Virus record (IMG/VR): IMGVR_UViG_3300034073_003340
Location: 310,001 to 374,000 of that record
Reading direction: 5' to 3' (one strand)
DNA: 64,000 nt
Part shown: positions 571 through 40,552 of the stretch, piece by piece
Position numbering within the stretch: the first letter of the stretch is position 1
How the letters are laid out: each line of letters starts with the position of its first letter
Notes under the pieces: model-generated
Databases searched by the model: none
Seen by the model: only the letters and a program-made list of their open reading frames with translations
Told to the model about the DNA's origin: nothing
Position numbers and translations under genes: made by a program

Positions 571-659
571 TGGAGGAAGACTAGGGACTTGAACCCTACA
601 CCCATAAGGGTGCCCACTGGTTTCGAATCAGGTCCGGGGCCCTCCCCGGTTAATCTTCC
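571..659 (-). tRNA. tRNA-Ser(CGA)
   Basis: Loop TT-CGA-AA, long variable arm, CCA, imperfect anticodon stem. Confidence 0.8.
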
Positions 660-668
660 ATGGTATTT

Positions 669-816
669 AGTTGAGGGCAAGTATCCGTATGGCATCTTTC
701 CGTTGCGTTTGCCAATTCCGCCACTTCCCGTCACAGAGTCGGGAAGCCAGGACTCGAACCTGGAAGACTAAAAGTCCACAGTTTTCTTTGATAAGCCAAA
801 CAATCGGCCCTCAACT
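669..816 (-). ncRNA. Y-RNA-like element A enclosing a permuted class II tRNA-like module
   Basis: AGTTGAGGGC-CGA...TTATC / CTTGCCCTCAACT; inside, T-arm plus CTTCCCG precede CGGGAAG plus D-arm. Confidence 0.75.
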
Positions 817-1135: not shown

Positions 1136-1274
1136 TCAACGGGCAAGTTGCGAAAAGGATGTTTTTCGGTGTCCTAACCACTAGACGAACCCCGCATAAT
1201 ATAGAGCGGGGTATGGGATTCGAACCCATGTAACCGGCGTGATAAGCGATAACCCTTATCAGTCGGCCCGTTGA
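1136..1274 (-). ncRNA. Y-RNA-like element B enclosing a permuted tRNA-Asp-like module (ATC)
   Basis: TCAACGGGC-CGA...GGGTTATC / CTTGCCCGTTGA; ACCCCGC and GCGGGGT form a 7-bp acceptor stem in reversed order. Confidence 0.8.
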
Positions 1275-5375: not shown

Positions 5376-5418
5376 AGTCGATCTCCTTGTCAGAGTGTCG
5401 ACTATTTACCGCAATGGT

Positions 5419-5491
5419 ATATGGGCAAGTTGGTGGCCAGGGGCTTGGTTCAAAGTTTGAGTTTGATAACCCTGAGCCGTCCGGCCCATAT
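5419..5491 (-). ncRNA. Y-RNA-like element G (no tRNA module)
   Basis: ATATGGGC-CGG...GGGTTATC / CTTGCCCATAT. Confidence 0.7.
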
Positions 5492-5493
5492 TT

Positions 5494-5570: not shown

Positions 5571-5614
5571 TCAATACGATTAGCAAGAACTGTTTCTTGT
5601 GTCAATAATTTTTG

Positions 5615-5803
5615 TGGAGACGACGGGATTCGAACCCGCACGAAAAGCTGACCCAAGCATTACCAAGGGCTGGTGTGTAGGTTCAAAGACTCGTCGCGAG
5701 CCTATAAAAAATATCCCACACCATCTTACGCAACCTTTCAGGTTTTACCCTGAATCGCGGTCTTGTCTTTTGCGATTGCCTGTCCCTCTAGGCGGACGTC
5801 CCC
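5615..5803 (-). ncRNA. tmRNA-like or tRNA-Ala-like RNA with a ~115-nt internal domain
   Basis: Acceptor GGGGACG/CGTCTCC with G3:U70 and A73; T-arm GCGGG-TTCGAAT-CCCGT; no anticodon arm. Confidence 0.55.
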
Positions 5804-9742: not shown

Positions 9743-9753
9743 ATGTAGAGACC

Positions 9754-9813
9754 TGAGCAAGTTGATGCGGCGAGGGGTTCATCACCAAAAGATAACCCTC
9801 ATGCTTCGGCTCA
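9754..9813 (-). ncRNA. Y-RNA-like element C (no tRNA module)
   Basis: TGAGC-CGA-AGCATGAGGG-TTATC...CCCTCG...CAACTTGCTCA. Confidence 0.7.
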
Positions 9814-9819
9814 AATCTA

Positions 9820-9895: not shown

Positions 9896-9899
9896 ATGA

Positions 9900-10015
9900 A
9901 TATGAGCAAGTTTTGTAAAGGACTTTCCCAGTTGCCTGGGGTGATGGATTTGAACCATCTAGTTTTGATTTGAAGTCAAAAGTTTTTCCGATAACCCTTT
10001 ACTATCGGCTCATAT
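9900..10015 (-). ncRNA. Y-RNA-like element D with a TCA anticodon arm, T-arm and loop-closed acceptor
   Basis: ATATGAGC-CGA...GGGTTATC / CTTGCTCATAT; TTTTGA-CTTCAAA-TCAAAA arm. Confidence 0.75.
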
Positions 10016-10088
10016 GGCGCCCTCGGGAGGATTCGAACCTACCTCATCTTCCCTTCGCAGGGGAAGTGCATGATCCACATGCGAGGGC
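10015..10088 (-). tRNA. tRNA-Arg(GCG), short D-arm
   Basis: TTCCC-CTGCGAA-GGGAA arm, CCA. Confidence 0.8.
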
Positions 10089-10957: not shown

Positions 10958-11040
10958 TGGTGGGAAGCAATGGAGTCGAACCATTCCCCGAAAGCGCGGT
11001 TTTACAGACCGCTTGCTAGAACCGCTAGCTTTTACTTCCC
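10958..11040 (-). tRNA. tRNA-Tyr(GTA)
   Basis: GCGGT-CTGTAAA-ACCGC, CCA. Confidence 0.88.
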
Positions 11041-11984: not shown

Positions 11985-12020
11985 GCCAACTGAGTAGCAT
12001 AAAAAGACCAGTTGTCAACA

Positions 12021-12107
12021 TGGTTGCAGAGGTGGGATTTGAACCCACGTAGCCTTTCGGCAGCCTCGGTTATGAGCCGAGCGAGATAACCACTCCTCTA
12101 CCCTGCG
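12021..12107 (-). tRNA. initiator-like tRNA(CAT) with a long variable arm
   Basis: C1:A72, CT-CAT-AA, GCC-GAAA-GGC variable stem, CCA. Confidence 0.8.
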
Positions 12108-12109
12108 AG

Positions 12110-12182
12110 TGCAACCAGTTGGAATCGAACCAACGACACGCGCATTTTCAGTGCGCTGCTCTACCTGCTGAGCTATGGTTAC
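12110..12182 (-). tRNA. tRNA-Phe(GAA)
   Basis: GCGCA-CTGAAAA-TGCGC. Confidence 0.9.
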
Positions 12183-12183
12183 A

Positions 12184-12259
12184 TGGACCTAACAGGGGCA
12201 TTTCAGCCCTCACTTTCTGACCAGCGTGGCGGTCAGCCGTGCCTCTTACACTAGTTAGG
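12184..12259 (-). pseudogene. tRNA-like RNA, 8-nt anticodon loop, non-canonical T-loop
   Basis: CCTAAC/GTTAGG acceptor, CTGACC-GCCACGCT-GGTCAG, CCA. Confidence 0.5.
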
Positions 12260-12262
12260 ATT

Positions 12263-12339
12263 TGGTGCCGACACCTGGAATCGAACCAGGAAAATCACCC
12301 TTATGAGAGGTAATAGGAGACCGCCTCCTTCCTACCGGC
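12263..12339 (-). tRNA. tRNA with CAT anticodon (Met or Ile2)
   Basis: CT-CAT-AA, CCA. Confidence 0.78.
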
Positions 12340-12345
12340 AAAGTT

Positions 12346-12420
12346 TGGCACGGGTGGAGGGATTCGAACCCTCTCTGCATGGTTTTGGAGACCAGCCGAC
12401 TACCAGTATCATACACCCAT
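12346..12420 (-). tRNA. tRNA-Trp(CCA)
   Basis: CT-CCA-AA, G73, CCA. Confidence 0.88.
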
Positions 12421-12435
12421 ATGAAAGATTTTTAG

Positions 12436-12506
12436 CAGGGCCAGTAGGAATCGAACCCACAAGAGCTGGTTTGGAGCCAACCATGATACCATTTCATCAT
12501 AACCCT
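12436..12506 (-). tRNA. tRNA-Trp(CCA)
   Basis: CT-CCA-AA, G73. Confidence 0.85.
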
Positions 12507-12529
12507 ATAGGTCAGAAAAGCTGACACAG

Positions 12530-12598
12530 TGGAAGCCTGGGATTTGAACCCACCAAACGGCTTTTATTCACCGTCATGCACCAAAACATCTGGCCCCC
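12530..12598 (-). pseudogene. tRNA-like RNA, Ala-type acceptor, 8-nt loop
   Basis: GGGGGCC/GGCTTCC-A, ACGGT-GAATAAAA-GCCGT, TTCAAAT T-loop. Confidence 0.5.
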
Positions 12599-12626
12599 AT
12601 GGAGGACGGATAGTAATCCGTCTTTG

Positions 12627-12697
12627 CGCAGCATGGGGGAATCGAACCCACCACCTCCAGGATTCCGCCTGGTATGCTAAACCTACAACATAGCCGC
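12627..12697 (-). pseudogene. tRNA-like RNA, 6-nt anticodon loop (Pro-like)
   Basis: CCAGG-CGGAAT-CCTGG, TTCGATT T-loop, imperfect acceptor. Confidence 0.45.
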
Positions 12698-12698
12698 A

Positions 12699-12783
12699 TG
12701 GTGGGTAGGTGCGGAATCGAACCACTCCCCGAAGGATCTGATTTACAGTCAGACTGCCGTATCCAAGACGACTTTACCTACCC
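12699..12783 (-). tRNA. tRNA-Tyr(GTA)
   Basis: TCTGA-CTGTAAA-TCAGA, variable arm, CCA. Confidence 0.88.
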
Positions 12784-12787
12784 ATAG

Positions 12788-12867
12788 AGGACCAGGTGGG
12801 ACTCGAACCCACGATGTATAATAGCCGGTTAAAAGCCGACGCCGATCGCCGCTACGGTGACTGGTCC
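12788..12867 (-). tRNA. tRNA-Lys(TTT)
   Basis: CT-TTT-AA, extended variable loop. Confidence 0.8.
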
Positions 12868-12873
12868 AAAGAT

Positions 12874-12951
12874 TGGTCAGGGTGAGAGGACTCGAACCTC
12901 CACGATGTCCTCCTTCCAAAGGAGACGACTTACCAATTAGTCCACACCCTG
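12874..12951 (-). tRNA. tRNA-Pro(TGG)
   Basis: TT-TGG-AA, C1-G72, CCA. Confidence 0.9.
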
Positions 12952-13087
12952 ATGTGGTCAAGACTTGCTAGATATATTGCTGTCCCGCATGGGACACCTG
13001 CCCGTCGGGGAGTCGAACCCTTCCGGTTGGGGACTTGAACCCCGCTTCACCCTAGCACCTACCCACTCGGTAGCTTTCGCTAAGTCT

Positions 13088-13161
13088 TGGTGCTTCAGCA
13101 AGGAATCGAACCTTGGTCGTGCCATTATCAGTGGCGTGCTCTACCATTGAGCTACAGAAGC
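13088..13161 (-). tRNA. tRNA-Ile(GAT)
   Basis: CT-GAT-AA, CCA. Confidence 0.92.
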
Positions 13162-13166
13162 ATGAT

Positions 13167-13294
13167 CGATGAGCAAGGAGGTGTGCTAGGAGATTGACTA
13201 GGTCCTACCCCGGCCCTCATTGTGGACCGGCCGAGACTCGAACTCGGATCGTTTGTTTCACAGACAAAGATAACCTAACGCTATCGGCTCATCG
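13167..13294 (-). ncRNA. Y-RNA-like element E enclosing a permuted tRNA-His-like module (GTG)
   Basis: CGATGAGC-CGA...GGTTATC / CTTGCTCATCG; TTTGT-CTGTGAA-ACAAA arm, T-arm, CCGGTCC then GGGCCGG. Confidence 0.8.
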
Positions 13295-13295
13295 G

Positions 13296-13378
13296 TGCGG
13301 ATGACTGGACTCGAACCAGCACGCCACTAGGGCACCGCCTTCTGAGGACGGCAAGTCTACCAATTTCATCACATCCGC
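13296..13378 (-). tRNA. tRNA-Leu(CAG)
   Basis: CT-CAG-AA, long variable arm. Confidence 0.9.
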
Positions 13379-13400
13379 ATGTAAAAGGCTTGTGAACCTT

Positions 13401-13477
13401 TGGTGCTCCCCGTGGGACTCGAACCCACACTGAACGGAGTTTGAACCCGCTGACTCTACCAATTGGCCTAGAGGAGC
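13401..13477 (-). tRNA. tRNA-Leu(CAA), short variable arm
   Basis: TT-CAA-AC, CCA. Confidence 0.85.
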
Positions 13478-13496
13478 ATGACACTGGCTAACAGCT

Positions 13497-13581
13497 TGGT
13501 GCGGATAGTGGGACTCGAACCCACACGCCCTAAGGCACAGGCCTCTCATGCCTGCAAGTCTACCAGTTTCATCATATCCGC
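13497..13581 (-). tRNA. tRNA-Leu(GAG)
   Basis: AT-GAG-AG, long variable arm, CCA. Confidence 0.88.
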
Positions 13582-13652
13582 ATAGTCAACAAAGTGTCAA
13601 TATTAACGACCTTTACTCTTACCTCCCGGAACGGTCAAGCGGGCGACTTTGT

Positions 13653-13727
13653 TGGTGCCCCATCCAAGAATCGAACTTGGATCTACGCCTTACCAAGGCG
13701 TTATAATAACCATTATAATAATGGGGC
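13653..13727 (-). tRNA. tRNA-Thr(GGT)
   Basis: ACGCC-TTGGTAA-GGCGT, CCA. Confidence 0.92.
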
Positions 13728-13728
13728 A

Positions 13729-13803
13729 TGGAGCAGGTAGAGGGGATCGAACCCTCTTCTACGGTTTGGAAGACCATCATAATAACCAATATACTATACC
13801 TGC
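13729..13803 (-). tRNA. tRNA-Gly(TCC)
   Basis: CT-TCC-AA, U73, CCA. Confidence 0.9.
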
Positions 13804-13804
13804 A

Positions 13805-13881
13805 TGGTGTCCATGGAGAGATTCGAACTCTCACTGTCTGCATTCTAAGCGCAGTGCCTCTTCCGATTGGGCTACATGGAC
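13805..13881 (-). tRNA. tRNA-Leu(TAG), short variable arm
   Basis: CT-TAG-AA, CCA. Confidence 0.88.
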
Positions 13882-13882
13882 A

Positions 13883-13980
13883 TGGCAGAGAGCAGAGGAC
13901 TTGAACCTCAAGCGCATGTAGGGGTAAATGGCGCTCACATGATTTTCATCAGCCCAGCGACCTCGCTGGTTTTACTCTCT
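13883..13980 (-). tRNA. Ser-like tRNA (TGA uncertain), degenerate anticodon arm
   Basis: G73, CCA, very long variable arm, 7-bp D-stem; anticodon loop does not fit 7 nt. Confidence 0.5.
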
Positions 13981-13981
13981 A

Positions 13982-14058
13982 TGGTAGATGATCAGGGGTT
14001 CGAACCCTGGACCTACGGTTTAAGAGACCGTCGCTACTACCAACTGAGCTAATCATCC
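13982..14058 (-). tRNA. tRNA-Lys(CTT)
   Basis: ACGGT-CTCTTAA-ACCGT, CCA. Confidence 0.92.
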
Positions 14059-14180
14059 ATAAGGGGCGCCACTAGCTTGTTCGTTTCCCTGGCGTGCCAT
14101 GGCGCCCAGCCAACAGCACTAGGGAGAAACCTTGCTTAAGGGTTTCGTAAGCATTGCCCCGTCCGACAATACTTGGAACT

Positions 14181-14254
14181 TGGATGCCCATCGAGGATTC
14201 GAACCTCGGTTGACCGGTTCAGAGCCGGGTCTCTTACCGTTAGAGGAATGGGCA
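14181..14254 (-). tRNA. tRNA-Gln(CTG)
   Basis: CT-CTG-AA, CCA. Confidence 0.9.
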
Positions 14255-14268
14255 ATAAGAGATAAAGT

Positions 14269-14342
14269 TGGTAGCCCCAACGGGGATCGAACCCGTTTCG
14301 CCGCCTTGAGAGGGCAGCAGCTTACCAATAGAAGATGGGGCC
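14269..14342 (-). tRNA. tRNA-Glu(CTC)
   Basis: CT-CTC-AA, CCA. Confidence 0.88.
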
Positions 14343-14343
14343 A

Positions 14344-14431
14344 TGGAGGACCAGGTGGGGTTCGAACCCACAAGGGACTTTCATCCGTCGCATTAAGAGT
14401 GCGGTGAGCCAACCAACTGCTCAACTGGTCC
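14344..14431 (-). tRNA. tRNA-Lys(CTT) with a long variable arm
   Basis: CT-CTT-AA, GGA-TGAAAG-TCC variable stem, CCA. Confidence 0.8.
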
Positions 14432-14436
14432 ATGAT

Positions 14437-14573
14437 CAACGGGCAAGTGGTGAAAAGGATGTTTTTCCCGGCTTTACCAATTTGCCTATCCCCCGTCAAT
14501 GGTCGGGGGAGGAGGACTTGAACCTCCAAACAGGGTCTCCTAATGACGATAACCCTTATCAATCGGCCCGTTG
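14437..14573 (-). ncRNA. Y-RNA-like element F enclosing a permuted tRNA-Leu-like module (TAG)
   Basis: CAACGGGC-CGA...GGGTTATC / CTTGCCCGTTG; TCCCCCG-A-CCA-TTGA-CGGGGGA. Confidence 0.8.
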
Positions 14574-14648
14574 GTCTAGGTGAGAGGATTCGAACCTCCA
14601 ATCCCTTGCTCCCGAAGCAAGTGCCTTACCAGATTAGGCCACACCTAG
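14572..14648 (-). tRNA. tRNA-Pro(CGG)
   Basis: CTTGC-TTCGGGA-GCAAG, CCA. Confidence 0.92.
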
Positions 14649-14679
14649 ATGATAGTTTACCGACATTTCGGTCAATATC

Positions 14680-14756
14680 TGGCTCCCAATGTAGGACTCG
14701 AACCTACAGCATCGACGTTAACAGCGTCGCTCCCCTACCGACAGGGACCATTGGGA
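14680..14756 (-). tRNA. tRNA-Asn(GTT)
   Basis: CGACG-CTGTTAA-CGTCG, CCA. Confidence 0.9.
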
Positions 14757-14780
14757 ATGGAATAAACCACTTTGGTTTAT

Positions 14781-14852
14781 TGGTGGAGCATAAGAGAATC
14801 GAACTCTTCCTACCGCGGTGCAAGCGCAGCGACTAGACCCACTAGATGCCCC
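14781..14852 (-). tRNA. tRNA-Ala(TGC), short D-arm
   Basis: G3:U70, CT-TGC-AC, CCA, 72 nt. Confidence 0.8.
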
Positions 14853-14920
14853 AAAAGGGATTGCCCGCCCCATCGGGTTTGTCCGCATTAGGCTAACTTT
14901 CAGGACTTGTTAGCTAACAG

Positions 14921-14989
14921 TGGATATCTTGGACTCGAACCATTTTCTCCAGCTAGACGCTGGCGCATTACCATATATGCTACCAATCC
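14921..14989 (-). pseudogene. degenerate tRNA with a 5-nt loop containing CTA
   Basis: CCAGC-GTCTA-GCTGG, D-arm and T-loop present, weak acceptor. Confidence 0.45.
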
Positions 14990-14992
14990 ATT

Positions 14993-15069
14993 TGGTCGGG
15001 ATAGCAGGACTCGAACCTGCGACCTCTTGTCCCCCAGACAAACGCGCTACCAGGCTGCGCTATACCCCG
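14993..15069 (-). tRNA. tRNA-Pro(GGG)
   Basis: CT-GGG-GG, C1-G72, CCA. Confidence 0.92.
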
Positions 15070-15506
15070 ATGATTTGGCCTTTTGTTTGTGATATGCGAA
15101 ATATATTCCCTGGCACTTCAGGGTGATCCGCATGAGGAAGGATTACTCCTTTCCCCTGTGCCTAAAGAACGGCGCATCACTACACCGTCCAATTTTTACT
15201 CCCACGTTCTCTCCGTGGTTTCATCCTTGGCCCGCCCATATGGGTTTATTTTAAGTGGCTATCCCGCAGTCTCGTTCCGCATATACCACTTGACAATTCA
15301 GGGAACCTGCACTAGGCATTTTCCTTGAAAGGTCGATCTATATCACACTAAGAAACTTTCGTTCCTTGGTGCTACGTCGTTGTGCCTTGTGGACATCAAC
15401 TCCGTTTTTGAGTTTAGCAGCTTCTTTTTGCTGTGTCAACAACTTTTTTGTTGCTGCTAAACTTTTTTGTTTGTGCCTTCTGCGCTAGCATCGGGCGGTT
15501 AAAAGG

Positions 15507-15533
15507 AAAGCCCCGGTAGTTTCCTACCGGGGC
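15507..15533 (-). terminator. intrinsic terminator
   Basis: GCCCCGGTAG/CTACCGGGGC followed by a T-rich tract on the minus strand. Confidence 0.65.
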
Positions 15534-15566
15534 CTTGTTTCCTTTTATGGGATGGACTTTTTGGAG

Positions 15567-15770
15567 TTATCCTCCGTGTCCCTCCTGGAAACTGGCCCCG
15601 GTCGTATCAAGATTCGCAGGCTTATTATAACCGACGAGTGTCCCGACTGGGCGGGTAATTTGTTCGCTACGCTGCCATTCGGCGCCCATAGCGGAGGCGG
15701 TAAACAACACGGCTTTCAGGCCGGCCTTTCCGCATTCCATATGGGTTCCAATATGCGACATAGAAATCAA
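15567..15770 (-). CDS. possible small late protein
   Basis: TATAAATA upstream, GAGG SD and a downstream terminator; no recognisable motif. Confidence 0.35.
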   Translation of the reverse strand: MISMSHIGTHMECGKAGLKAVLFTASAMGAEWQRSEQITRPVGTLVGYNKPANLDTTGASFQEGHGG

Positions 15771-15958
15771 TTACCTCAAATTCTGTGATGCCCGAATTGG
15801 CATCTGTGTTTCTATTTATACTGAACGATTCATTCGTCAAGCACAAAATGACCACAAAGCAAAAAAGTTTTCTACTTTGCTTCCAAGGGGCTTAATGTAC
15901 TCCTTGGACTTTAGTTGCAAGCCCTTAGAAAAATAAATTTCAAAGCCTACAACCTTTG

Positions 15959-16031
15959 TGGAGAATATCGGACTCGAACCGATCACCTACGCCTTGCAAA
16001 AGCGTCGCTCTCCCAGATGAGCTAATCCCCC
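15959..16031 (-). tRNA. tRNA-Ala(TGC)
   Basis: G3:U70, TT-TGC-AA; ends CAA. Confidence 0.9.
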
Positions 16032-16195
16032 TTGGTTGCTATAGTCTCCCCGACCCTCCGGGTATAACCTCGCTTCTCGCTTGGTGCCTATAGCTAGAGC
16101 ATCTAGTAAGCTAATGCTGTTCTGCTGCTCTATGTTCCCAATATACTGAAGTCCGTAGCCTAGGGCAATAACTTTTTCAGCTTCTACAAATCTAT

Positions 16196-17254
16196 TTATA
16201 CCTGGTTAATTTCTATAAGCTCAAAAGCTAGCAAAACCCTATTTCTATCAACCAGTGCCTTTATGAACTGCTGAGTGGCATTTTCCCATGTAAACTTTTC
16301 GCTATGAGCCACAACGTCCCAGCGAGGAATAACAGAGCAAACATTGATAGCCATGGCCAAGTCGTCATGGGTATATCCATTGAAGCATCCTTCAATTATA
16401 TCCTTGGGACCAGTAACCGGATAGGCAGCAACCGGCGTTCCACAACGCATTGCTTCAATCATGACTAATCCAAAGGTATCTGACTTACTGGGGAAAACAA
16501 ACACATCAGCATAACTGTACCAACGCGCCAGATCTTCACCTTGTTTAGATCCCAAAAATATCACATCAGGATATTTGGCCTTATAGGTTTCCAACATTGG
16601 CCCATCGCCGATTTGGATTTTTGTTCCAGGCATCTTGAGTTCATAAAAAGCTTCAAGATTCTTTTCAACGCTAACACGACCAACATTGAGATAAAATGGG
16701 CGTGGCATATCCTCAGATTTCATAGGTGATCTTTCCCGAGGATAAAACAATTTGGTATCGACACCTCGCCCCCAAACAATGAGCTTGTGCTCAGGGAAAC
16801 CATGAGAGATCATTTCTTCTTTCATGGATTTGGTTGTGACTAGAATATAGGAATCATTGCGGTAAACATGACGAAGCCACTTCCATGCGAGATTTTTACC
16901 AAATCCAACGCGGGCTTCAATATACTCAGCAAATTTGGTATGGAAACTTGATGACCATTTTTCCCCTCGACGCTTTAAGATTTTACGCATGGAGAGACCA
17001 AGCGGGCCTTCGGTGGCAATATGAACCATAGCGGGGTTTTCAGCAGCAAGAAAACTCTCGAGCACTGCTGATGGAAAAAGGGCAAGACGTATCTCGGAAT
17101 AACCAGGGCACGGGATATTTCTGAATAGTCCAGGATGGACTACCTTGACACGATATCCCTGATTCTTCAATTCTTTTATTGTATTCTTAAGGGTAGTAAC
17201 CACCCCATTGACTTGAGGCTCCCAAGCATCGGTTACGATCAGGATTTTCTTCAT
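16196..17254 (-). CDS. GT4 (GT-B) glycosyltransferase, Agt-like glycolipid synthase
   Basis: VTDAWEPQVNGVV, HIATEGPLG, VGRVSVEKNL and SDTFGLVMIEAM..G.PV motifs. Confidence 0.85.
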   Translation of the reverse strand: MKKILIVTDAWEPQVNGVVTTLKNTIKELKNQGYRVKVVHPGLFRNIPCPGYSEIRLALFPSAVLESFLAAENPAMVHIATEGPLGLSMRKILKRRGEKWSSSFHTKFAEYIEARVGFGKNLAWKWLRHVYRNDSYILVTTKSMKEEMISHGFPEHKLIVWGRGVDTKLFYPRERSPMKSEDMPRPFYLNVGRVSVEKNLEAFYELKMPGTKIQIGDGPMLETYKAKYPDVIFLGSKQGEDLARWYSYADVFVFPSKSDTFGLVMIEAMRCGTPVAAYPVTGPKDIIEGCFNGYTHDDLAMAINVCSVIPRWDVVAHSEKFTWENATQQFIKALVDRNRVLLAFELIEINQV

Positions 17255-18078
17255 TGCTTATCCTCCAAGAGCACAATAGGTTGCTCGTATGTATGAGCTT
17301 CCAAGAGCCCAGCGTTCCAAGTTGCTAGTTCCAGCAGCTTGCCTTCGCGCCATTCAAGAAGGACGAATCGACCATCATGATGTTCCGCAAGGGCTGTTTT
17401 GCTTTCTACAAAATCGCCATCATTCATATAGAGAATGCCGTCGATCATTCTAATCTCAGCATGATGAATATGACCAGCAATGATACCATCATAATTTCTA
17501 ATCTTACATGCTTCTGCCAAACCTTCTTCAAACTTGCCAATAAAACTAGCCGCGTTCTTGACTTTGGTCTTCACGTATTTGCTGAGACTCCAGTAACCCA
17601 TTTTGAACCTACGACGAAACCAATTTAGATAACGATTGATTTCAATAAGAGTAACATAGCCCCAGTCACCCAACTTTGCCAACCATTTGTGATAAGTGGT
17701 GATAATATCGTATAGGTCACCGTGCGTTACTAACATGCGCTTACCAGAAACCGTGGTATAATCGTATTCCTGGACTATCTCAACATCACCGAGCATCAAA
17801 GGTAGGTAATCTCTTACAGTCTCATCGTGATTTCCAGGTATATAGACTACGCGAGTGCCTTTGCGGCTTTTACGTAGGATCTTTTGAACAACTTCGTTGT
17901 GGGCTTTTGGCCAATACCATTTCTTACTCAACTGCCACATATCAATTATGTCGCCGACTAAGAAGAGATTATCGGATTCAGTGTTGCGGAGAAACGCCAA
18001 CAACTCCTGAGCGCTCGCGCCCTTGGTTCCAAGGTGTAGATCAGAGATCCAGATACTTTTGTAAATTTTCGGTTCCAT
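17251..18078 (-). CDS. plcP: metallophosphoesterase, PlcP/LpxH-like
   Basis: ISDLHLG, LVGDIIDMW, WYWP..HNEVVQK, PGNHDE, THGD and GHIH motifs; coupled to the GT4 gene. Confidence 0.7.
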   Translation of the reverse strand: MEPKIYKSIWISDLHLGTKGASAQELLAFLRNTESDNLFLVGDIIDMWQLSKKWYWPKAHNEVVQKILRKSRKGTRVVYIPGNHDETVRDYLPLMLGDVEIVQEYDYTTVSGKRMLVTHGDLYDIITTYHKWLAKLGDWGYVTLIEINRYLNWFRRRFKMGYWSLSKYVKTKVKNAASFIGKFEEGLAEACKIRNYDGIIAGHIHHAEIRMIDGILYMNDGDFVESKTALAEHHDGRFVLLEWREGKLLELATWNAGLLEAHTYEQPIVLLEDKQ

Positions 18079-18162
18079 GCTTCCTAATTAGCTAATTAGG
18101 AAACACAAAATCTATTTTAATGGAATCGTAACAAAGACCCAGTTGCTGATTGAGCATTCAGC

Positions 18163-18408
18163 TCATGAAGTGGTAAACCCTTTTTCATGAAATTTGGCAG
18201 CAATCGTGAGACGCTGGGCAAAGGGAACCTGGATGGTTGCTCGTCCACCATCTTTACAATGTTGGATGATTTTCTTGGCTTCCCTTATGTCACAATTCGT
18301 GATATCACGAATCAACATAGCTAGACCTTTGGTATCAGTCTTTCCATCATGCTTGTGAATCGTCAATTCTGCCATATAACTCATTCCTATGATAGAGACA
18401 GTAGGCAA
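18163..18408 (-). CDS. small protein, possible ribosomal bL12 C-terminal-like domain
   Basis: LIRDITNCDIREAKKII resembles the bL12 helix pattern. Confidence 0.4.
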   Translation of the reverse strand: MPTVSIIGMSYMAELTIHKHDGKTDTKGLAMLIRDITNCDIREAKKIIQHCKDGGRATIQVPFAQRLTIAAKFHEKGFTTS

Positions 18409-18480
18409 GCACTAGCACTAGGACGGAAACAATGTCAGTAATTAATTCCCACATATAGTTCTCCATATACTAAATACTCA

Positions 18481-18648
18481 ATGCGTATTCGAGAATTCCT
18501 ACCGGAGAATTGGTGGAAAGACCTCGATCCTGGTTTTCTTGGGATGATGGGTTATACAGAAGAAACCCAGAAACCCAAAGAAGATCCAGCCGATCTTGTG
18601 TCCAGTGTAGCCAGTGACGTTAAGCAGATTCGCCGTCGTCCCCGCTAA
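18481..18648 (+). CDS. 55-aa late protein absent from the ORF track
   Basis: TAAATA-N4-ATG; MRIREFLPE matches the shared N-terminal motif. Confidence 0.65.
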   Translation: MRIREFLPENWWKDLDPGFLGMMGYTEETQKPKEDPADLVSSVASDVKQIRRRPR

Positions 18649-19060
18649 GCTTTGCTATCCGCCTTGCTTCTGCCCTAGCTGTCGCTTCAGCACCCGTCTT
18701 TTTGAAATGACAAGGCTGACATAACGTCTGAAGGTTGGGCAATTTCCAGTATTCAAGGTCACCATTGCTTTCAATCAATGGCTTCTTATGATCTAAGTGC
18801 CAGACATCTTTGCCCTTACGAGCACATTGATGTCCACACTCCCTACAGATGCCCTTATCTCTTCTATAAACGACCTTACGGGTTACTGCTGGCCAGTGGA
18901 GTATTTTGTATTCCTTGACGCATGATGGGTGCCAATTGGCCCTTTTATTCAGCGTTTGGCCGTCTTTCTTAAAAATCAATTGACCACACCAACGACATTG
19001 TCCCGGTAGTGGGTTATGATAATGCGGAGGCTTTGGTGGTTCTCTATGTGAGCTCATCAC
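18620..19060 (-). CDS. HNH endonuclease
   Basis: CRECG...WHLDHKKPL...NLQTLCQPCHFKKT. Confidence 0.85.
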   Translation of the reverse strand: MMSSHREPPKPPHYHNPLPGQCRWCGQLIFKKDGQTLNKRANWHPSCVKEYKILHWPAVTRKVVYRRDKGICRECGHQCARKGKDVWHLDHKKPLIESNGDLEYWKLPNLQTLCQPCHFKKTGAEATARAEARRIAKLSGDDGESA

Positions 19061-19073
19061 ATATTTATGACAT

Positions 19074-19502
19074 TCAAGCTTTACCTAGGAGCCGTCGAGT
19101 ATCTTCTTTGCTAGGATATTTCTTTAGACTTGTCATTTTCAAAGCCAACTGATACTGTTTCCAAGCTGCGATCACCTGTTCACTTTGAGTTTCTTCACCA
19201 GTCAAAGTGGGCATAAGATCCATCCACACCGCTTCCTCAGACACAAACCTAGGAAACTTTCCTTGAAGTCTTGGCTGAATCAGTTTTCCACTAAGATAGA
19301 GTTCAGTTGCCACATCATAACATCGTCCCTGATCTAGACCCATCAGGTAATCAGGTCGATGAAGATATTCGTCAACCACGTCTTCTATCTGACTGGAGTC
19401 GTAGATAGCCGTTTGGGCAATGACTAGATAGACATCGTCATAATCCACCGTGCCTTTTACAATGTCACGGACACAACGTCCAAAAGAGAATCCTATTTTC
19501 AT
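19074..19502 (-). CDS. hypothetical phage protein
   Basis: Probable start MKIGFSFGRCVRDIVKG. Confidence 0.7.
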   Translation of the reverse strand: MKIGFSFGRCVRDIVKGTVDYDDVYLVIAQTAIYDSSQIEDVVDEYLHRPDYLMGLDQGRCYDVATELYLSGKLIQPRLQGKFPRFVSEEAVWMDLMPTLTGEETQSEQVIAAWKQYQLALKMTSLKKYPSKEDTRRLLGKA

Positions 19503-19509
19503 GCTGATA

Positions 19510-19758
19510 CTATGATGCGACCAGCACCTTTGCGTCAAGATTCTTCTCGAGTTTATCAATAGATTGTAAGATGTTTCTGGTTTGGTTGATCCGCTCACGA
19601 GTCAGCCTATCCCCCAGATCCTGCGCCGCGGCTAAATCATCATCGGTTAATCTGTTCCCAAGACCTTTGAGAACTAAAAGCAATTCCTTTTGTGTAACAT
19701 GGAAATTCCACATGATACTGGCCGTCAGATGACCGTGGTGGATTTTGGTGTCAGACAT
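19510..19758 (-). CDS. hypothetical protein
   Basis: ORF with an SD, in operon context. Confidence 0.65.
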   Translation of the reverse strand: MSDTKIHHGHLTASIMWNFHVTQKELLLVLKGLGNRLTDDDLAAAQDLGDRLTRERINQTRNILQSIDKLEKNLDAKVLVAS

Positions 19759-19868
19759 TTTTCTTCCTCACTATAAAAACTTCTCAGGCTCTTATAATGA
19801 AGTGTGTGAGAATGACGGTTCGTAACACTTTAGATGAATAATATCGATGTGTTGTGCTAAACAAACGA

Positions 19869-20312
19869 TCAGTCGTAATCTATGTCCAATGACAAAACGA
19901 TGACATGGCGTTCAATCCCTGGGGCTGGATTGATCACAACTTCGTGACCCTCACGGCCGCAGGAGATGATATTTCCCTCATAGACAGAACCATCTGATAA
20001 CATCATTCCACCAGGATGAATTTCGCGATCAAGGCAGAGGGACTTTACGACTTTTGTGATCTTGAAAATATGATCCGTGTTATCATCCAAGGTGAAATCG
20101 CAACCCAAAGTGGTAGCTACCTTTCGACGATTGGAGTGATCGGCAATATCGATCAATCTTTCCAAAGCACCATTCACCGGTTTGGCCGGACAAATGTAGG
20201 TTCCGTGCGAAATATTGATATCCATACCAGGAGACATCTCTTCAGCATATGAGATAGGAAGTGTCTGCGAACTCAGAGCAAGAGCAACCAAACCGATCAT
20301 CATATTGGCCAT
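19869..20312 (-). CDS. exported hypothetical protein
   Basis: AGGAGG SD, signal-peptide-like MANMMIGLVALALSS. Confidence 0.6.
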   Translation of the reverse strand: MANMMIGLVALALSSQTLPISYAEEMSPGMDINISHGTYICPAKPVNGALERLIDIADHSNRRKVATTLGCDFTLDDNTDHIFKITKVVKSLCLDREIHPGGMMLSDGSVYEGNIISCGREGHEVVINPAPGIERHVIVLSLDIDYD

Positions 20313-39376: not shown

Positions 39377-40552
39377 TTATTCTTCGGGCACAAAGTAATG
39401 TGGGATGAAACGCGAGGCATTTCCCGTGACCTCGCTCACGTCTTCACGGATGCCCATGCCCGAAGGACGACCGCCAACAATCCAGCTGCCAATGATGGGA
39501 GTCATTCCATCAAACTTGGGCAGTGGAAGGTATTCCTGGAAGATTGATTCAGCAAGTTGATCATAGCCGCGAGAAACTCCCTGAATCGCAACCTTACCAT
39601 CCTTGATGATCTTTACATCAGCGCCTTCACGCGCCAGCATAGGCTTTTGGACATAGTTGCCCTTAAGAGGGGTCGAAGACCAATAAGCCGGGAGAAGGTT
39701 TTCATGACCGGGGTAGAGTTCCCACAGGATGGGAAGAATACCCTTGTTGCTCAGGACCAGCTTCCACGCTGGTTCAATGACGTCCCAGGGTTCGTTGAGC
39801 ATGAAACGTCCAAAATCCTCACGGATCAGCCATTCCCAGGGATAGAGCTTGAAGATTGTGTTAATTGACTTCTCATTGAGATCAGTGAATGTCGAGCCGT
39901 TCCAGCCGATATTCTCAATGTCAATGTAGTCAGTGTTGAGACCGGCCTGTACCGCACAATCCCGGAGGTATTCAGCGGTGCCCTTGTCTTCGAGGTTTTC
40001 AGCGACCGCAGCAAAGTAAAAAGTTTCGTTGGGTCCGAGAACCTTGCCACCAATATCCTTGAGAACCTCGATCAAACGTTCGTGGATGCTGTTGAACTGA
40101 TCAATAGTTTGACCCGTACGCTGAGCATACTGCTCCATCCAAAACCACTGGACTACCGAGGCTTCCAGTAGACTGGTCGGAGTATCCGCGTTGAACTCCA
40201 GCATCTTTGGAGTGCCTTGCGCATCAAAGGCAAAGTCAAAACGACCATAGAGGTCAACGTCCTGGCGCTCCCAGGACTTCTTGATCAATCCATGAAAGTC
40301 TGCCGGGATCGCGAGCTGACTGAGCATGTCGCGTTCGATCGCATAATCAACAGCCGAGAGGCACATACGATAAAGAATCGTGCTAGCGTCTTCGACCTTA
40401 TCGATTTCAGCAGAGGTGAATTCGTATGCCTTACTTTCATCCCAATAGGCGGGATCCACACCAGGCTCCGTCACAAGAGTGTGCCAGTTGAAGCCAACCT
40501 TCTCACATTCTTCCTGCCAATTAGGCCGGACTTCGATCTCAAGACGCTTCAA
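39377..40552 (-). CDS. glutathionylspermidine synthase-like ATP-grasp protein (YgiC/YjfC family)
   Basis: YGRFDF, KMLEFNADTPTSLLE, IFKLYPWEW, EPAWK..LSNK and KP...REG motifs. Confidence 0.9.
   Translation of the reverse strand: MKRLEIEVRPNWQEECEKVGFNWHTLVTEPGVDPAYWDESKAYEFTSAEIDKVEDASTILYRMCLSAVDYAIERDMLSQLAIPADFHGLIKKSWERQDVDLYGRFDFAFDAQGTPKMLEFNADTPTSLLEASVVQWFWMEQYAQRTGQTIDQFNSIHERLIEVLKDIGGKVLGPNETFYFAAVAENLEDKGTAEYLRDCAVQAGLNTDYIDIENIGWNGSTFTDLNEKSINTIFKLYPWEWLIREDFGRFMLNEPWDVIEPAWKLVLSNKGILPILWELYPGHENLLPAYWSSTPLKGNYVQKPMLAREGADVKIIKDGKVAIQGVSRGYDQLAESIFQEYLPLPKFDGMTPIIGSWIVGGRPSGMGIREDVSEVTGNASRFIPHYFVPEE

What the first reader, a model, noticed from the sequence alone, without database searches (positions are those of the whole stretch)
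14437..14573. Element F rejoins into tRNA-Leu(TAG) and encodes an internal CCA
Seen: the 5' half ends GCC-G-GG and the 3' half starts GTC-ATTAGGA-GACCC, giving a GGGTC/GACCC stem. The acceptor reads TCCCCCG-A-CCA, a 4-nt spacer, then CGGGGGA. The scaffold is almost identical to element B, but the junction lies one base earlier (28/29 versus 29/30). Inference: the same module was fused independently to different tRNAs, and opening the 4-nt spacer would expose a chargeable CCA end.
Basis: partly seen in the sequence, partly recalled or inferred. Interest (0 to 1): 0.68.

Follow-up and report, generated by a model that had tools for sequence, protein, structure and literature searches.

The report
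Phage Y RNA with tRNA-shaped core
The "split tRNA" is real in the sequence, but the shared scaffold is the Ro60-binding stem of a Y RNA, so this is most likely a giant phage's tRNA-mimicking Y RNA, an unusually complete one, and not a broken tRNA gene that gets rejoined.

Summary
On the minus strand of 14437-14573, the 3' part of a tRNA (from position 29, ending A-CCA) is followed by a 4-nt spacer and then the 5' part (positions 1-28). Joined in silico, they give a perfect cloverleaf.

The "scaffold" is the bulged helix and GNCGA/GGGUUAUC motif of Y RNAs, the partners of the Ro60 protein. The 436-kb phage genome encodes a Ro60 (TROVE plus Ro60 vWA domains) with one such RNA just upstream, and eight more in and beside the tRNA array, two or three of them with no tRNA part.

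A covariance model finds 47 full-length relatives in other viral contigs, with strong covariation. All five near-complete genomes tested that carry them encode Ro60.

Element F is therefore a YrlA-class Y RNA, which is a known kind. It is an unusual variant, with a full anticodon-arm mimic and an encoded CCA.

Its tRNA body is tRNA-Pro-like. One orthologue type (L040 and a matching marine contig) reads UGG instead of UAG, so the "anticodon" is probably not used for decoding.

All three F-type sequences keep A-CCA while the spacer changes (4, 5 and 18 nt). This fits opening by RNase P, as shown for Mycobacterium smegmatis YrlA. No expression data were obtainable.

The parts
14563..14573 (-). 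5' strand of the terminal helix P1 with the Ro60-site motif (CAACGGGC, bulged C at 14565, then GA). The first two bases overlap the CCA end of the upstream tRNA-Pro.
   Evidence: Sequence. It pairs with 14437-14446. In 47 relatives the pairs covary, the G.U next to the bulge is kept in 43/47 and C-G in 42/47. [quoted passage not shown]
14548..14561 (-). 5' strand of the upper Y stem P2 (UGAUAAGGGU), ending in the invariant GGGUUAUC (14548-14555).
   Evidence: Invariant in alignment A1. P2 pairs with 14451-14460. Six of six upper pairs show double changes and 90% of cells are paired. The UUAUC corresponds to the conserved YUAY of YrlA RNAs (PMC4201824).
14535..14547 (-). Anticodon-arm mimic: GUC / AUUAGGA / GAC, a 7-nt loop with U33, triplet UAG and G37.
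   Evidence: Orthologue L040 has GCU/AUUGGAA/AGC, a compensated stem with triplet UGG. At least 20 of 47 relatives have a hairpin of 3 bp or more with a 7-nt loop, U at position 2 and a purine at position 6, against 5% of shuffles.
14528..14534 (-). C42 and C43 (paired with G27 and G28 at 14467-14468) plus the 5-nt variable loop UGUUU.
   Evidence: U48 can form a Levitt pair with A15.
14511..14527 (-). T arm: GGAGG-UUCAAGU-CCUCC.
   Evidence: The helix is 99% paired in 47 relatives.
14500..14510 (-). Acceptor 3' strand UCCCCCG, discriminator A (14503) and encoded CCA (14500-14502).
   Evidence: A-CCA is identical in L040, in the marine contig of run X7 and in L131. N73-CCA occurs in 14 of 47 family members.
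14496..14499 (-). 4-nt spacer UUGA closing the acceptor stem. The predicted RNase P cut lies between 14496 and 14495.
   Evidence: The spacer is ACUGA in L040 and X7 and 18 nt in L131. Its size is typical of spacers between neighbouring tRNA genes in this array, 1-24 nt. Cleavage is inferred from M. smegmatis YrlA (PMC4201824).
14467..14495 (-). tRNA 5' part: acceptor 5' strand CGGGGGA, U8 A9, D arm (GGC / AAAUUGGUAAA / GCC, with G18 and G19), G26, G27 and G28.
14437..14466 (-). Trailer: junction AAAAAC, 3' strand of P2 (AUCCUUUUCA), internal loop CCAC, and 3' strand of P1 (UU-GCCCGUUG).
   Evidence: The CUUGC(C/U)C sequence is invariant or nearly so.
1136..1274 (-). Paralogue B: near-identical Y stem and an Asp-like tRNA module, with junction 29/30. 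CCA has decayed to CUA.
   Evidence: (138.7 bits).
670..815 (-). Paralogue A: Y stem plus a class II tRNA-like module without an anticodon loop. CCA has decayed to CUC.
   Evidence: (61.7 bits). Orthologue L031:6021-6167 keeps A-CCA.
13166..13295 (-). Paralogue with a His-like loop (CUGUGAA) and a degenerate D arm. It has CAA in place of CCA.
   Evidence: (67.1 bits). ARAGORN mis-called part of it as tRNA-His 13222-13298.
9899..10016 (-). Paralogue with a 5-bp acceptor stem closed by a GCAA tetraloop, no D arm, and loop CUUCAAA.
   Evidence: 43.7 bits.
9750..9817 (-). Y RNA stem-loop without any tRNA module (scaffold only).
   Evidence: 23.6 bits. It carries a perfect GCCGAAG motif.
5418..5492 (-). 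Second scaffold-only Y RNA.
   Evidence: (33.4 bits). Rfam's nematode stem-bulge (Y RNA homologue) family ceN72-3_ceN74-2 hits it at 31 bits, below the gathering score of 38 (PMC4726728).

Best explanation
Element F is a phage-encoded Y RNA of the YrlA class.

Structure. Its two ends pair into the conserved bulged helix that Ro60 proteins bind. Its middle is a circularly permuted, almost complete tRNA-Pro-derived cloverleaf. The cloverleaf has a T arm, a 7-bp acceptor stem closed by A-CCA-UUGA, a D arm, and a 5-bp anticodon arm from which the Y stem branches at position 28/29.

Most likely life cycle (inferred):
1. It is transcribed with the neighbouring tRNAs. Its ends are set by 3' maturation of the upstream tRNA-Pro and by RNase P cutting in front of the downstream tRNA-Lys.
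2. The stem is bound by the phage's own Ro60.
3. With roughly even odds, host RNase P also cuts in front of C1 inside the acceptor loop and the 4-nt spacer is trimmed back to the encoded CCA. This would leave a nicked, two-piece RNA of about 74 and 59 nt, held together by the Y stem and the tRNA fold, as shown for M. smegmatis YrlA.

It is not spliced into a decoding tRNA. The tRNA-shaped module serves as the effector or tether end of a Ro60 particle acting on RNA decay, RNA repair or tRNA-directed conflicts.

Its layout (3' part, CCA, short spacer, 5' part) is what the junction of a head-to-tail tRNA dimer in this array looks like. This fits the published idea that YrlA RNAs arose from tRNA dimers.
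For: 1. Rfam YrlA matches 14437-14569(-) over the whole model (1-114) at E 0.0065 in the local search. The anticodon hairpin appears as a 14-nt insertion.

2. A covariance model built from 12 such elements finds 47 full-length members at E<=1e-7 in the window and 26 viral-contig loci. 89.1% of cells are paired against 42-44% when partners are slid. 32 of 34 pairs show double changes, and 0 of 500 shuffles reach the observed values. In P1 the bulged C and the adjacent G.U (43/47) are conserved, as at the Ro60 site.

3. The genome encodes a 600-aa Ro60. It has TROVE (2e-40) and vWA_Ro60 (1.2e-52) domains. It matches D. radiodurans Rsr (2nvo, 3e-118) and Xenopus Ro60 (1yvp, 1.4e-106).

4. All nine full-length model hits in the 436-kb genome lie either in the tRNA array (8) or about 600 nt upstream of Ro60 on its strand (1).

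5. TROVE is present in 5 of 5 genomes at least 90% complete that carry these elements, and in 7 of 10 overall. The three misses are 9-60% fragments. In G009, three tRNA-like members sit directly upstream of Ro60.

6. Scaffold-only copies exist.

7. One orthologue type differs in the 'anticodon' (UAG against UGG) with a compensated stem. A73-CCA is invariant across spacers of 4, 5 and 18 nt.

8. Published precedent. YrlA RNAs are permuted tRNA mimics bound by Ro60, and M. smegmatis YrlA, which has a 7-bp acceptor stem, is cut by RNase P in vivo and in vitro and carries CCA (PMC4201824; bioRxiv 10.1101/312249).

9. The cultured Sinorhizobium phage Phosso shares the sheath-Ro60-tube gene order. 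It carries unannotated members, two of them with A-CCA plus a spacer.
Against: - The Rfam YrlA score (23.2 bits) is far below the gathering score (69). The same Rfam model also hits a plain tRNA-tRNA junction at 31 bits, so that hit alone proves little.
- F lies about 309 kb from the Ro60 gene along the record. Published YrlA genes are nearly all within 4 kb.
- There is no RNA evidence. The RNA runs found were contigs holding only short matches. Ro60 binding, RNase P cleavage and co-transcription are all inferred.
- The covariation counts come from an alignment fitted to the model.
- CCA is lost in three of the window's four other tRNA-bearing paralogues and absent from the fourth. An exposed CCA end is therefore not a general requirement of the family.
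Confidence: 0.8

Rival explanations
1. F is a permuted tRNA gene. The flanking module is removed, positions 28 and 29 are ligated, the acceptor loop is opened, and a working tRNA-Leu(UAG) results.
For: The rejoined sequence is a flawless cloverleaf with all tertiary-contact bases and CCA. The genome has an Rnl2-family RNA ligase and a CCA-adding-family enzyme. Wang et al. [quoted passage not shown]
Against: - The module is a conserved Ro60-binding stem that also exists without a tRNA and next to Ro60.
- There is no bulge-helix-bulge at the junction (inspection).
- The genome has no splicing endonuclease domain and no RtcB. No such enzyme is known in bacteria.
- The body is class I and Pro-like, and orthologues switch between UAG and UGG without other changes.
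- Normal tRNA-Leu(tag) and tRNA-Pro(tgg) genes lie in the same arrays.
- Many paralogues lack CCA or a D arm, or have tetraloop-closed acceptors.
Confidence: 0.05
2. F is a Ro60-bound Y RNA whose tRNA module is functionally tRNA-like after opening. It would be charged, or recognised through its anticodon arm. It would then act as a bait or decoy for host tRNA-cutting defence nucleases, or tether Ro60 to synthetases, EF-Tu or ribosomes. This refines the best explanation rather than replacing it.
For: - The anticodon-loop shape (7 nt, U33, purine 37) is kept across the family while the triplet varies freely.
- The stem halves always sum to a 5-bp anticodon stem, although the branch point moves between 26/27 and 29/30.
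- Canonical NGGUC variable loops are common.
- CCA is preferentially retained next to fast-changing spacers, in 13 of 16 sequences in the four orthologue groups.
- The L040-type orthologue keeps all four bases I recall as E. coli ProRS identity elements (G35, G36, A73, G72). That list is from my own knowledge.
Against: There is no experimental evidence at all. CCA has decayed in several members. A bulky stem branching from the anticodon stem may block ribosome or synthetase binding.
Confidence: 0.2
3. F is a decaying by-product of tandem tRNA duplication and rearrangement in a fast-evolving array, with no function of its own.
For: The layout equals a tRNA-dimer junction. CCA-encoding tRNAs (38 of 49) with 1-24 nt spacers are the rule in this array. 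Some paralogues are degenerate.
Against: - Conservation with compensatory changes across many divergent viral contigs.
- An identical copy in contigs from two other studies, one of them wastewater, and a 96%-identical copy in a marine contig.
- An invariant Ro60 motif, and strict co-occurrence with Ro60.
Confidence: 0.03

Closest known systems
[quoted passage not shown] 2014 (PMC4201824); structure in Wang et al. 2018 (bioRxiv 10.1101/312249)
   Same: - The 5' and 3' ends pair into a stem carrying the GNCGA Ro60 motif.
- The conserved YUAY (here UUAUC) is present.
- The T arm lies 5' of the D arm and the acceptor stem is closed by a loop, making a circularly permuted tRNA mimic with tRNA tertiary-contact bases.
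- The genome encodes Ro60.
- Phage examples are already known (mycobacteriophages, CcrColossus, phage G, Thermus phiLo; PMC12135203).
   Different: - Published YrlA is described as lacking an anticodon loop and a free CCA end. F has a 5-bp anticodon arm with a 7-nt U33/R37 loop and an encoded A73-CCA.
- It is one of eight copies inside or beside a run of about 50 tRNA genes, about 309 kb from Ro60 instead of within 4 kb.
- The stem keeps both strands of the metazoan-type bulged helix.
- It scores far below Rfam's gathering score.
Mycobacterium smegmatis YrlA
   Same: It has a 7-bp acceptor stem. RNase P cuts the closed acceptor loop in vivo and in vitro, and the 5' piece ends in CCA. Both halves stay with Ro60 (PMC4201824).
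   Different: There the CA is added after cleavage. In F the whole CCA is in the gene, followed by a 4-nt spacer. No processing data exist for F.
Permuted tRNA genes of Cyanidioschyzon merolae, other algae and Thermofilum pendens (Soma 2007, Maruyama 2010 and Chan 2011, as cited in bioRxiv 10.1101/312249)
   Same: The 3' half lies upstream of the 5' half, the acceptor stem is closed in the precursor, and leader and trailer pair with each other.
   Different: Those have a bulge-helix-bulge cut by the splicing endonuclease, are ligated through a circular intermediate, and are the cell's only gene for that tRNA. F has a Ro60-binding stem instead, sits in a phage of bacteria that lacks that endonuclease, and is redundant with normal tRNA genes.
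Metazoan Y RNAs and nematode stem-bulge RNAs
   Same: They share the terminal bulged helix (GGUCCGA-like 5' strand, UUG-containing 3' strand). From my memory of human Y1, Y4 and Y5, they also share a GGGUUAUC-like upper-stem sequence. The scaffold-only copy 5418-5492 gives a sub-threshold Rfam hit to the nematode family.
   Different: They have no tRNA-like module, and they are eukaryotic RNA polymerase III genes.

Membership tests
YrlA-class Y RNA | Ro60-site motif GNCGAAN0-1G near the 5' end, within a helix formed by the two RNA ends with a bulged C | tested here: met
   F reads GCCGAUUG, one mismatch to the motif, and the scaffold-only copy reads GCCGAAG. The helix is CAACGGGC-C-GA / UU-GCCCGUUG. 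In 47 relatives P1 is 92% paired and nine of its ten pairs show double changes. The tenth, the G.U beside the bulged C, is kept in 43/47.
YrlA-class Y RNA | Permuted tRNA-like module: T arm, then a loop-closed acceptor stem, then the D arm, with tRNA tertiary-contact bases | tested here: met
   U8, A14, A15:U48, G18 G19, A21, U54 U55 C56 and A58 are all present.
YrlA-class Y RNA | A Ro60/TROVE protein encoded by the same genome | tested here: met
   A 600-aa ORF has TROVE and vWA_Ro60 domains and strong matches to solved Ro60 structures. Five of five near-complete related genomes also have it.
YrlA-class Y RNA | Gene within about 4 kb of Ro60 on the same strand (search criterion of Chen et al. 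2014) | tested here: not met
   F lies at genome position 324,436-324,574 and Ro60 at about 13,338-15,140. Another family member is about 600 nt upstream of Ro60 on the same strand (L128:9732-9887). In G009, three tRNA-like members are adjacent to Ro60.
YrlA-class Y RNA | Score at or above Rfam RF02553 gathering threshold | tested here: not met
   23.2 bits against 69. The hit is full-length, E 0.0065 in a 241-nt search, and was not listed in the 17-kb search.
YrlA-class Y RNA | Physical binding by Ro60, plus tRNA-type modifications or RNase P cleavage | not testable with these tools
   This needs RIP/EMSA, primer extension and RNase P assays.
Permuted tRNA gene (processed to a functional tRNA) | 3' half upstream of 5' half, and the rejoined product is a canonical cloverleaf | tested here: met
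   ARAGORN calls the rejoined sequence a tRNA.
Permuted tRNA gene (processed to a functional tRNA) | Bulge-helix-bulge motif at the leader/trailer junction, and a splicing endonuclease plus ligase to use it | tested here: not met
   The junction reads UUAUC|G29 and G28|AAAAAC, with no 3-nt bulge / 4-bp helix / 3-nt bulge. The tRNA_int_endo and RtcB domains are absent from the complete genome. Only an Rnl2-family ligase is present.
Permuted tRNA gene (processed to a functional tRNA) | Anticodon and identity elements conserved as for a decoding tRNA, with the gene needed for the tRNA set | tested here: not met
   The triplet is UAG in F and L131 but UGG in L040 and X7, on an otherwise near-identical Pro-like body. 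Ordinary Leu(tag) and Pro(tgg) genes are present.

The most novel reading that the evidence does not exclude
In these giant phages, Y RNAs have kept or regained a whole tRNA. After RNase P opens the acceptor loop, they would be two-piece molecules with a CCA end, an anticodon arm and a Ro60-binding handle. As such they could be aminoacylated or recognised by anticodon-directed enzymes. They might act as decoys or sensors for host tRNA-cutting defences, or bring Ro60 to the translation or tRNA-repair machinery. They would also be living intermediates showing that Y RNAs arise from head-to-tail tRNA dimers.
Probability: 0.2. Interest if true: 0.8.

Novelty: new variant of a known kind. Interest (0 to 1): 0.5.

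Why it matters
Y RNAs and Ro60 are conserved from bacteria to humans, where Ro60 is a lupus and Sjogren autoantigen. What the tRNA-like end of bacterial Y RNAs does is still unknown.

This phage family offers the most tRNA-like Y RNAs seen so far. They have a full anticodon arm and a gene-encoded CCA. They occur in up to nine copies per genome with different "anticodons", embedded in tRNA arrays.

That has three consequences:
- It gives direct sequence support to the tRNA-dimer origin of Y RNAs.
- It shows that gene finders miss or mis-call these elements. One was called tRNA-His here, and the members found in phage Phosso carry no annotation in its GenBank record.
- Because relatives sit in a cultured Sinorhizobium phage, several questions become testable. 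Are such RNAs opened, charged or targeted by tRNA nucleases? What is Ro60 for in phage infection?

Tried and rejected
- **Self-cleaving ribozyme in the scaffold.** By inspection, the hammerhead core (CUGANGA...GAAA) is not present in the right order. No ribozyme family appeared in the Rfam E-value searches.
- **Bulge-helix-bulge splice motif.** Not present.
- **Phage-encoded RtcB or splicing endonuclease.** Both absent.
- **Rfam match for the Ro60-adjacent RNA.** None.
- **Single-sequence MFE fold of F.** It recovers P1, the T arm, the acceptor and the D stem (z = -3.3). It mispairs the P2 and anticodon region, so comparative analysis was used instead.
- **GenBank phages.** Megablast of 12000-20000 gave only a 39-nt tRNA match. 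blastn of F gave nothing.
- **Recent copy of an array tRNA.** The best match is tRNA-Pro(tgg) at only 71% identity.
- **Expression.** These confirm the DNA in other samples and one orthologue variant, but say nothing about transcription or RNA ends. A metatranscriptome contig shares only 20-25-nt pieces.
- **Promoter and terminator scan.** Not above chance, and nothing specific to F.

Full report
**1. Setting**

The window is positions 310,001-374,000 of a 435,856-bp virus record with direct terminal repeats, rated complete. Its first 16 kb hold 50 ARAGORN tRNA calls, all on the minus strand. Rfam confirms 41 of them at gathering score.

The finding lies on the minus strand between tRNA-Pro(cgg) (14572-14648) and tRNA-Lys(ctt) (14344-14431).

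**2.

Read 5' to 3' on the minus strand, the element has three parts:
- a leader: CAACGGGC-C-GA-UUGAUAAGGGUUAUC;
- a tRNA part in permuted order;
- a trailer: AAAAAC-AUCCUUUUCA-CCAC-UU-GCCCGUUG.

The tRNA part runs as follows. It starts with positions 29-31, a 7-nt loop AUUAGGA and positions 39-43. Then come the variable loop UGUUU, the T arm, the acceptor 3' strand UCCCCCG, A73, CCA and the spacer UUGA. It ends with the acceptor 5' strand CGGGGGA, U8 A9, the D arm, G26, G27 and G28.

ARAGORN sees nothing in the native order. It calls the in-silico rejoined 77-mer a canonical tRNA with anticodon TAG.

Element B (1136-1274) has the same flanks, 93% and 90% identical. Its tRNA body is different (58% identical) and its junction lies at 29/30.

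**3. What the scaffold is**

The leader and trailer pair into a helix with a bulged C followed by G.U and A-U. Above it sits a second helix ending in an invariant GGGUUAUC.

This is the architecture of Y RNAs, the partners of the Ro60 protein. Chen et al. (PMC4201824) define bacterial YrlA RNAs by three features. One is a GNCGAAN0-1G motif near the 5' end, related to the GGUCCGA contacted by Xenopus Ro60. Another is a conserved YUAY. The third is a central module with the T arm 5' of the D arm and a loop-closed acceptor stem, which amounts to a circularly permuted tRNA mimic.

Rfam's YrlA model aligns to 14437-14569 over its full length (23.2 bits, E 0.0065 locally). It treats the anticodon hairpin as a 14-nt insertion. 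That score is well below the gathering score. The model also hits an ordinary tRNA-tRNA junction at 31 bits. The Rfam hit is therefore only a lead.

**4. Independent tests**

(a) *Ro60 gene.* The genome encodes a 600-aa Ro60 with TROVE and Ro60-vWA domains. It matches D. radiodurans Rsr at 3e-118 and Xenopus Ro60 at 1.4e-106.

(b) *Family members in viral contigs.* A scan of IMG/VR for GGGTTATC followed by a T loop returned many giant-phage contigs. A descriptor search pulled out elements with the same closing helix.

(c) *Covariation.* A covariance model built from 12 of them finds 47 full-length members at E<=1e-7.
- 89.1% of cells are paired, against 42-44% when partners are slid by 1-3 columns.
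- 32 of 34 pairs show changes on both sides.
- No shuffle out of 500 reaches the observed values.
- The caveat is that the alignment is fitted to the model.
- Partial hits (model positions 46-108) are plain tandem tRNA junctions. Only full-length hits were counted as members.

(d) *Distribution in the window's genome.* The nine full-length hits lie in or just beside the tRNA array (eight) or about 600 nt upstream of Ro60 on its strand (one), and nowhere else.

(e) *Co-occurrence with Ro60.*
- TROVE is found in 5 of 5 related records at least 90% complete, and in 7 of 10 overall. The three misses are 9%, 18% and 60% fragments.
- In G009, three tRNA-like members sit directly upstream of Ro60. 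In G005 and G006, short members do.

(f) *Scaffold without a tRNA.* The window holds two scaffold-only copies, at 5418-5492 and 9750-9817. The first gives a sub-threshold hit to the nematode stem-bulge RNA family, whose members are Y RNA homologues (PMC4726728).

Together these results place F in the Y RNA / YrlA kind with good confidence.

**5. Why F is not a tRNA gene waiting to be rejoined**

- There is no bulge-helix-bulge at the junction. The complete genome has no tRNA splicing endonuclease domain and no RtcB. An Rnl2-family ligase and a CCA-adding-family enzyme do exist.
- The body is class I and most like tRNA-Pro (C1-G72, A73; 71% identity to the array's Pro(tgg)).
- The orthologue in L040 reads UGG in the loop, with the hairpin stem compensated (GUC/GAC to GCU/AGC). 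A 130-kb marine contig from another study carries the same variant. L131 reads UAG like F.
- A decoding tRNA would not be expected to switch between Leu and Pro triplets on an unchanged body.
- All these arrays also carry ordinary tRNA-Leu(tag) and tRNA-Pro(tgg) genes.
- Paralogues range from nearly perfect cloverleaves to forms without a D arm or with tetraloop-closed acceptors.

**6. What is unusual**

Wang et al. (bioRxiv 10.1101/312249) describe S. Typhimurium YrlA as lacking an anticodon loop, and YrlA generally as lacking a free CCA end. This phage family differs in four ways.

- *Anticodon arm.* Most members carry a hairpin with a 7-nt loop, U at position 2 and a purine at position 6. 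At least 20 of 47 were found automatically, against 5% of shuffles, and several more by eye.
- *Stem geometry.* The hairpin stem plus the pairs made with the 5' part always sum to a 5-bp anticodon stem, although the branch point moves between 26/27 and 29/30. Many members then have a canonical NGGUC variable loop.
- *Encoded CCA.*
  - N73-CCA follows the acceptor stem in 14 of 47 members, where about 0.7 would be expected by chance.
  - Within the four orthologue groups, including phage Phosso, it is present in 13 of 16 sequences, although the spacer after it differs in every one.
  - For F itself, A-CCA is invariant across spacers of 4, 5 and 18 nt.
  - CCA has decayed in the window's own A (CUC), B (CUA) and 13166 (CAA) copies.
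- *Location and copy number.* The copies lie inside the tRNA array, far from Ro60.

**7. Likely mechanism**

Shown here: the anatomy, the family and its covariation, the Ro60 co-occurrence, CCA retention, and anticodon drift.

Inferred:
- co-transcription with the flanking tRNAs. No promoter or terminator specific to F was found. The upstream tRNA's CCA abuts P1, and the downstream tRNA starts 5 nt after it;
- binding of the stem by the phage Ro60;
- cleavage by RNase P in front of C1 and trimming of the spacer to the CCA. This follows M. smegmatis YrlA, whose 7-bp acceptor stem makes it an RNase P substrate in vivo and in vitro. Its halves stay bound to Ro60 (PMC4201824).

The role of the tRNA-shaped end is open. 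Published ideas are tethering Ro60 to PNPase or to RNA-repair enzymes (PMC4201824; PMC12135203; PMC7824862). The conserved anticodon-loop shape with free triplets also fits a bait for anticodon-directed enzymes.

**8. Origin**

In this array, 38 of 49 tRNA genes encode CCA, and neighbours are often 1-24 nt apart. F's centre (3' part, CCA, 4 nt, 5' part) is therefore what a head-to-tail dimer of one tRNA looks like. My model's central part does cross-hit such junctions.

This supports the tRNA-dimer origin proposed by Sim and Wolin (as cited in bioRxiv 10.1101/312249). The difference is that here the acceptor stem is a genuine acceptor stem rather than spacer sequence.

The near-identity of the B and F stems, against their different bodies, points to exchange of modules or gene conversion.

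**9. Occurrence and a test system**

- Contigs identical to the window over F occur in runs from two other studies, one a wastewater metagenome (X3) and one labelled only 'metagenome' (X4). A variant 96% identical over the 421 bases laid occurs in a marine contig.
- The closest cultured relative by Ro60 is Sinorhizobium phage Phosso (49.9% identity, 469 kb). It has the same sheath-Ro60-tail-tube order.
- Phosso carries three high-scoring tRNA-like members and two scaffold-only ones. The three tRNA-like members lie in stretches with no annotated feature, and two of them have A-CCA plus a spacer.

**10. Verdict**

The module and the CCA-opening idea stand. Rejoining into tRNA-Leu does not.
- The object is a new variant of a known kind.
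- Interest is moderate. It is not a new class of RNA, but it is the most tRNA-like Y RNA described. It has multiplied inside phage tRNA arrays and can be studied in culture.

Noticed in passing
window 13222-13298 (-): ARAGORN's 'tRNA-His(gtg)', which overlaps tRNA-Leu 13294-13378, is not a tRNA gene. It is the 5' part (Y stem, His-like hairpin, T arm) of Y RNA element 13166-13295.
   Followed up: yes
window 5418-5492 (-) and 9750-9817 (-): Two short Y RNA stem-loops carry the Ro60 motif but no tRNA module. The first gives a sub-threshold Rfam hit (31 bits, gathering score 38) to the nematode stem-bulge RNA family ceN72-3_ceN74-2.
   Followed up: partly
G000:C1:307931-308064 (-), just upstream of the window: A further full-length family member (52.1 bits) lies 2 kb before the window starts, so the array of Y RNAs extends beyond it.
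   Followed up: no
L128:9732-9887 (-) = G000:C1:15731-15886: A 150-nt Y RNA with the same stem but a non-tRNA-like interior sits about 600 nt upstream of the Ro60 gene on the same strand. A 100-aa ORF of unknown function lies between them.
   Followed up: partly
window 13805-13881 (-) and 13401-13477 (-): tRNAs with Leu anticodons (TAG, CAA) are only 77 nt long including CCA, so they have class I bodies without the long variable arm that bacterial tRNA-Leu normally has. Their charging identity is unclear.
   Followed up: no
window 5612-5803 (-): Weak Rfam tmRNA match (22 bits, E 1.6e-5, below gathering score) in a 257-nt gap that ends in a T arm and acceptor-like sequence. It may be a phage tmRNA-like RNA. 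ARAGORN calls none.
   Followed up: no
window 575-659, 10962-11040, 13888-13979 (-): Rfam's tRNA-Sec model gives sub-threshold hits (33-38 bits) to extra long-arm tRNA-like sequences that ARAGORN did not call. More weak tRNA-like hits lie at 1697-1764, 12627-12697 and 14921-14989.
   Followed up: no
L131:1481-1554 (-): A related 462-kb phage contig has a tRNA with anticodon CTA (called tRNA-Pyl by ARAGORN), which would be an amber-suppressor-like tRNA in its array.
   Followed up: no
PV764938.1 (Sinorhizobium phage Phosso) 19153-19291, 24186-24323, 24423-24562, 420435-420501, 420663-420736: A cultured jumbo phage carries family members that are not annotated. This was checked for the first three, which lie in stretches with no listed feature.
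   Followed up: partly
window 39377-40552 (-), 52544-53797 (-), 56357-58228 (+), 62046-63398 (+): The window also encodes a glutathionylspermidine synthase homologue, a ClpX-like ATPase, and gyrase/topoisomerase IV B- and A-like subunits.
   Followed up: no
window 14548-14567, in run X17: A 1,549-nt contig from a wastewater metatranscriptome library carries a 20-nt exact copy of the Y-stem leader (CGAUUGAUAAGGGUUAUCG region) in an otherwise different context. It may be a related element present in an RNA library, but DNA carry-over cannot be excluded.
   Followed up: no
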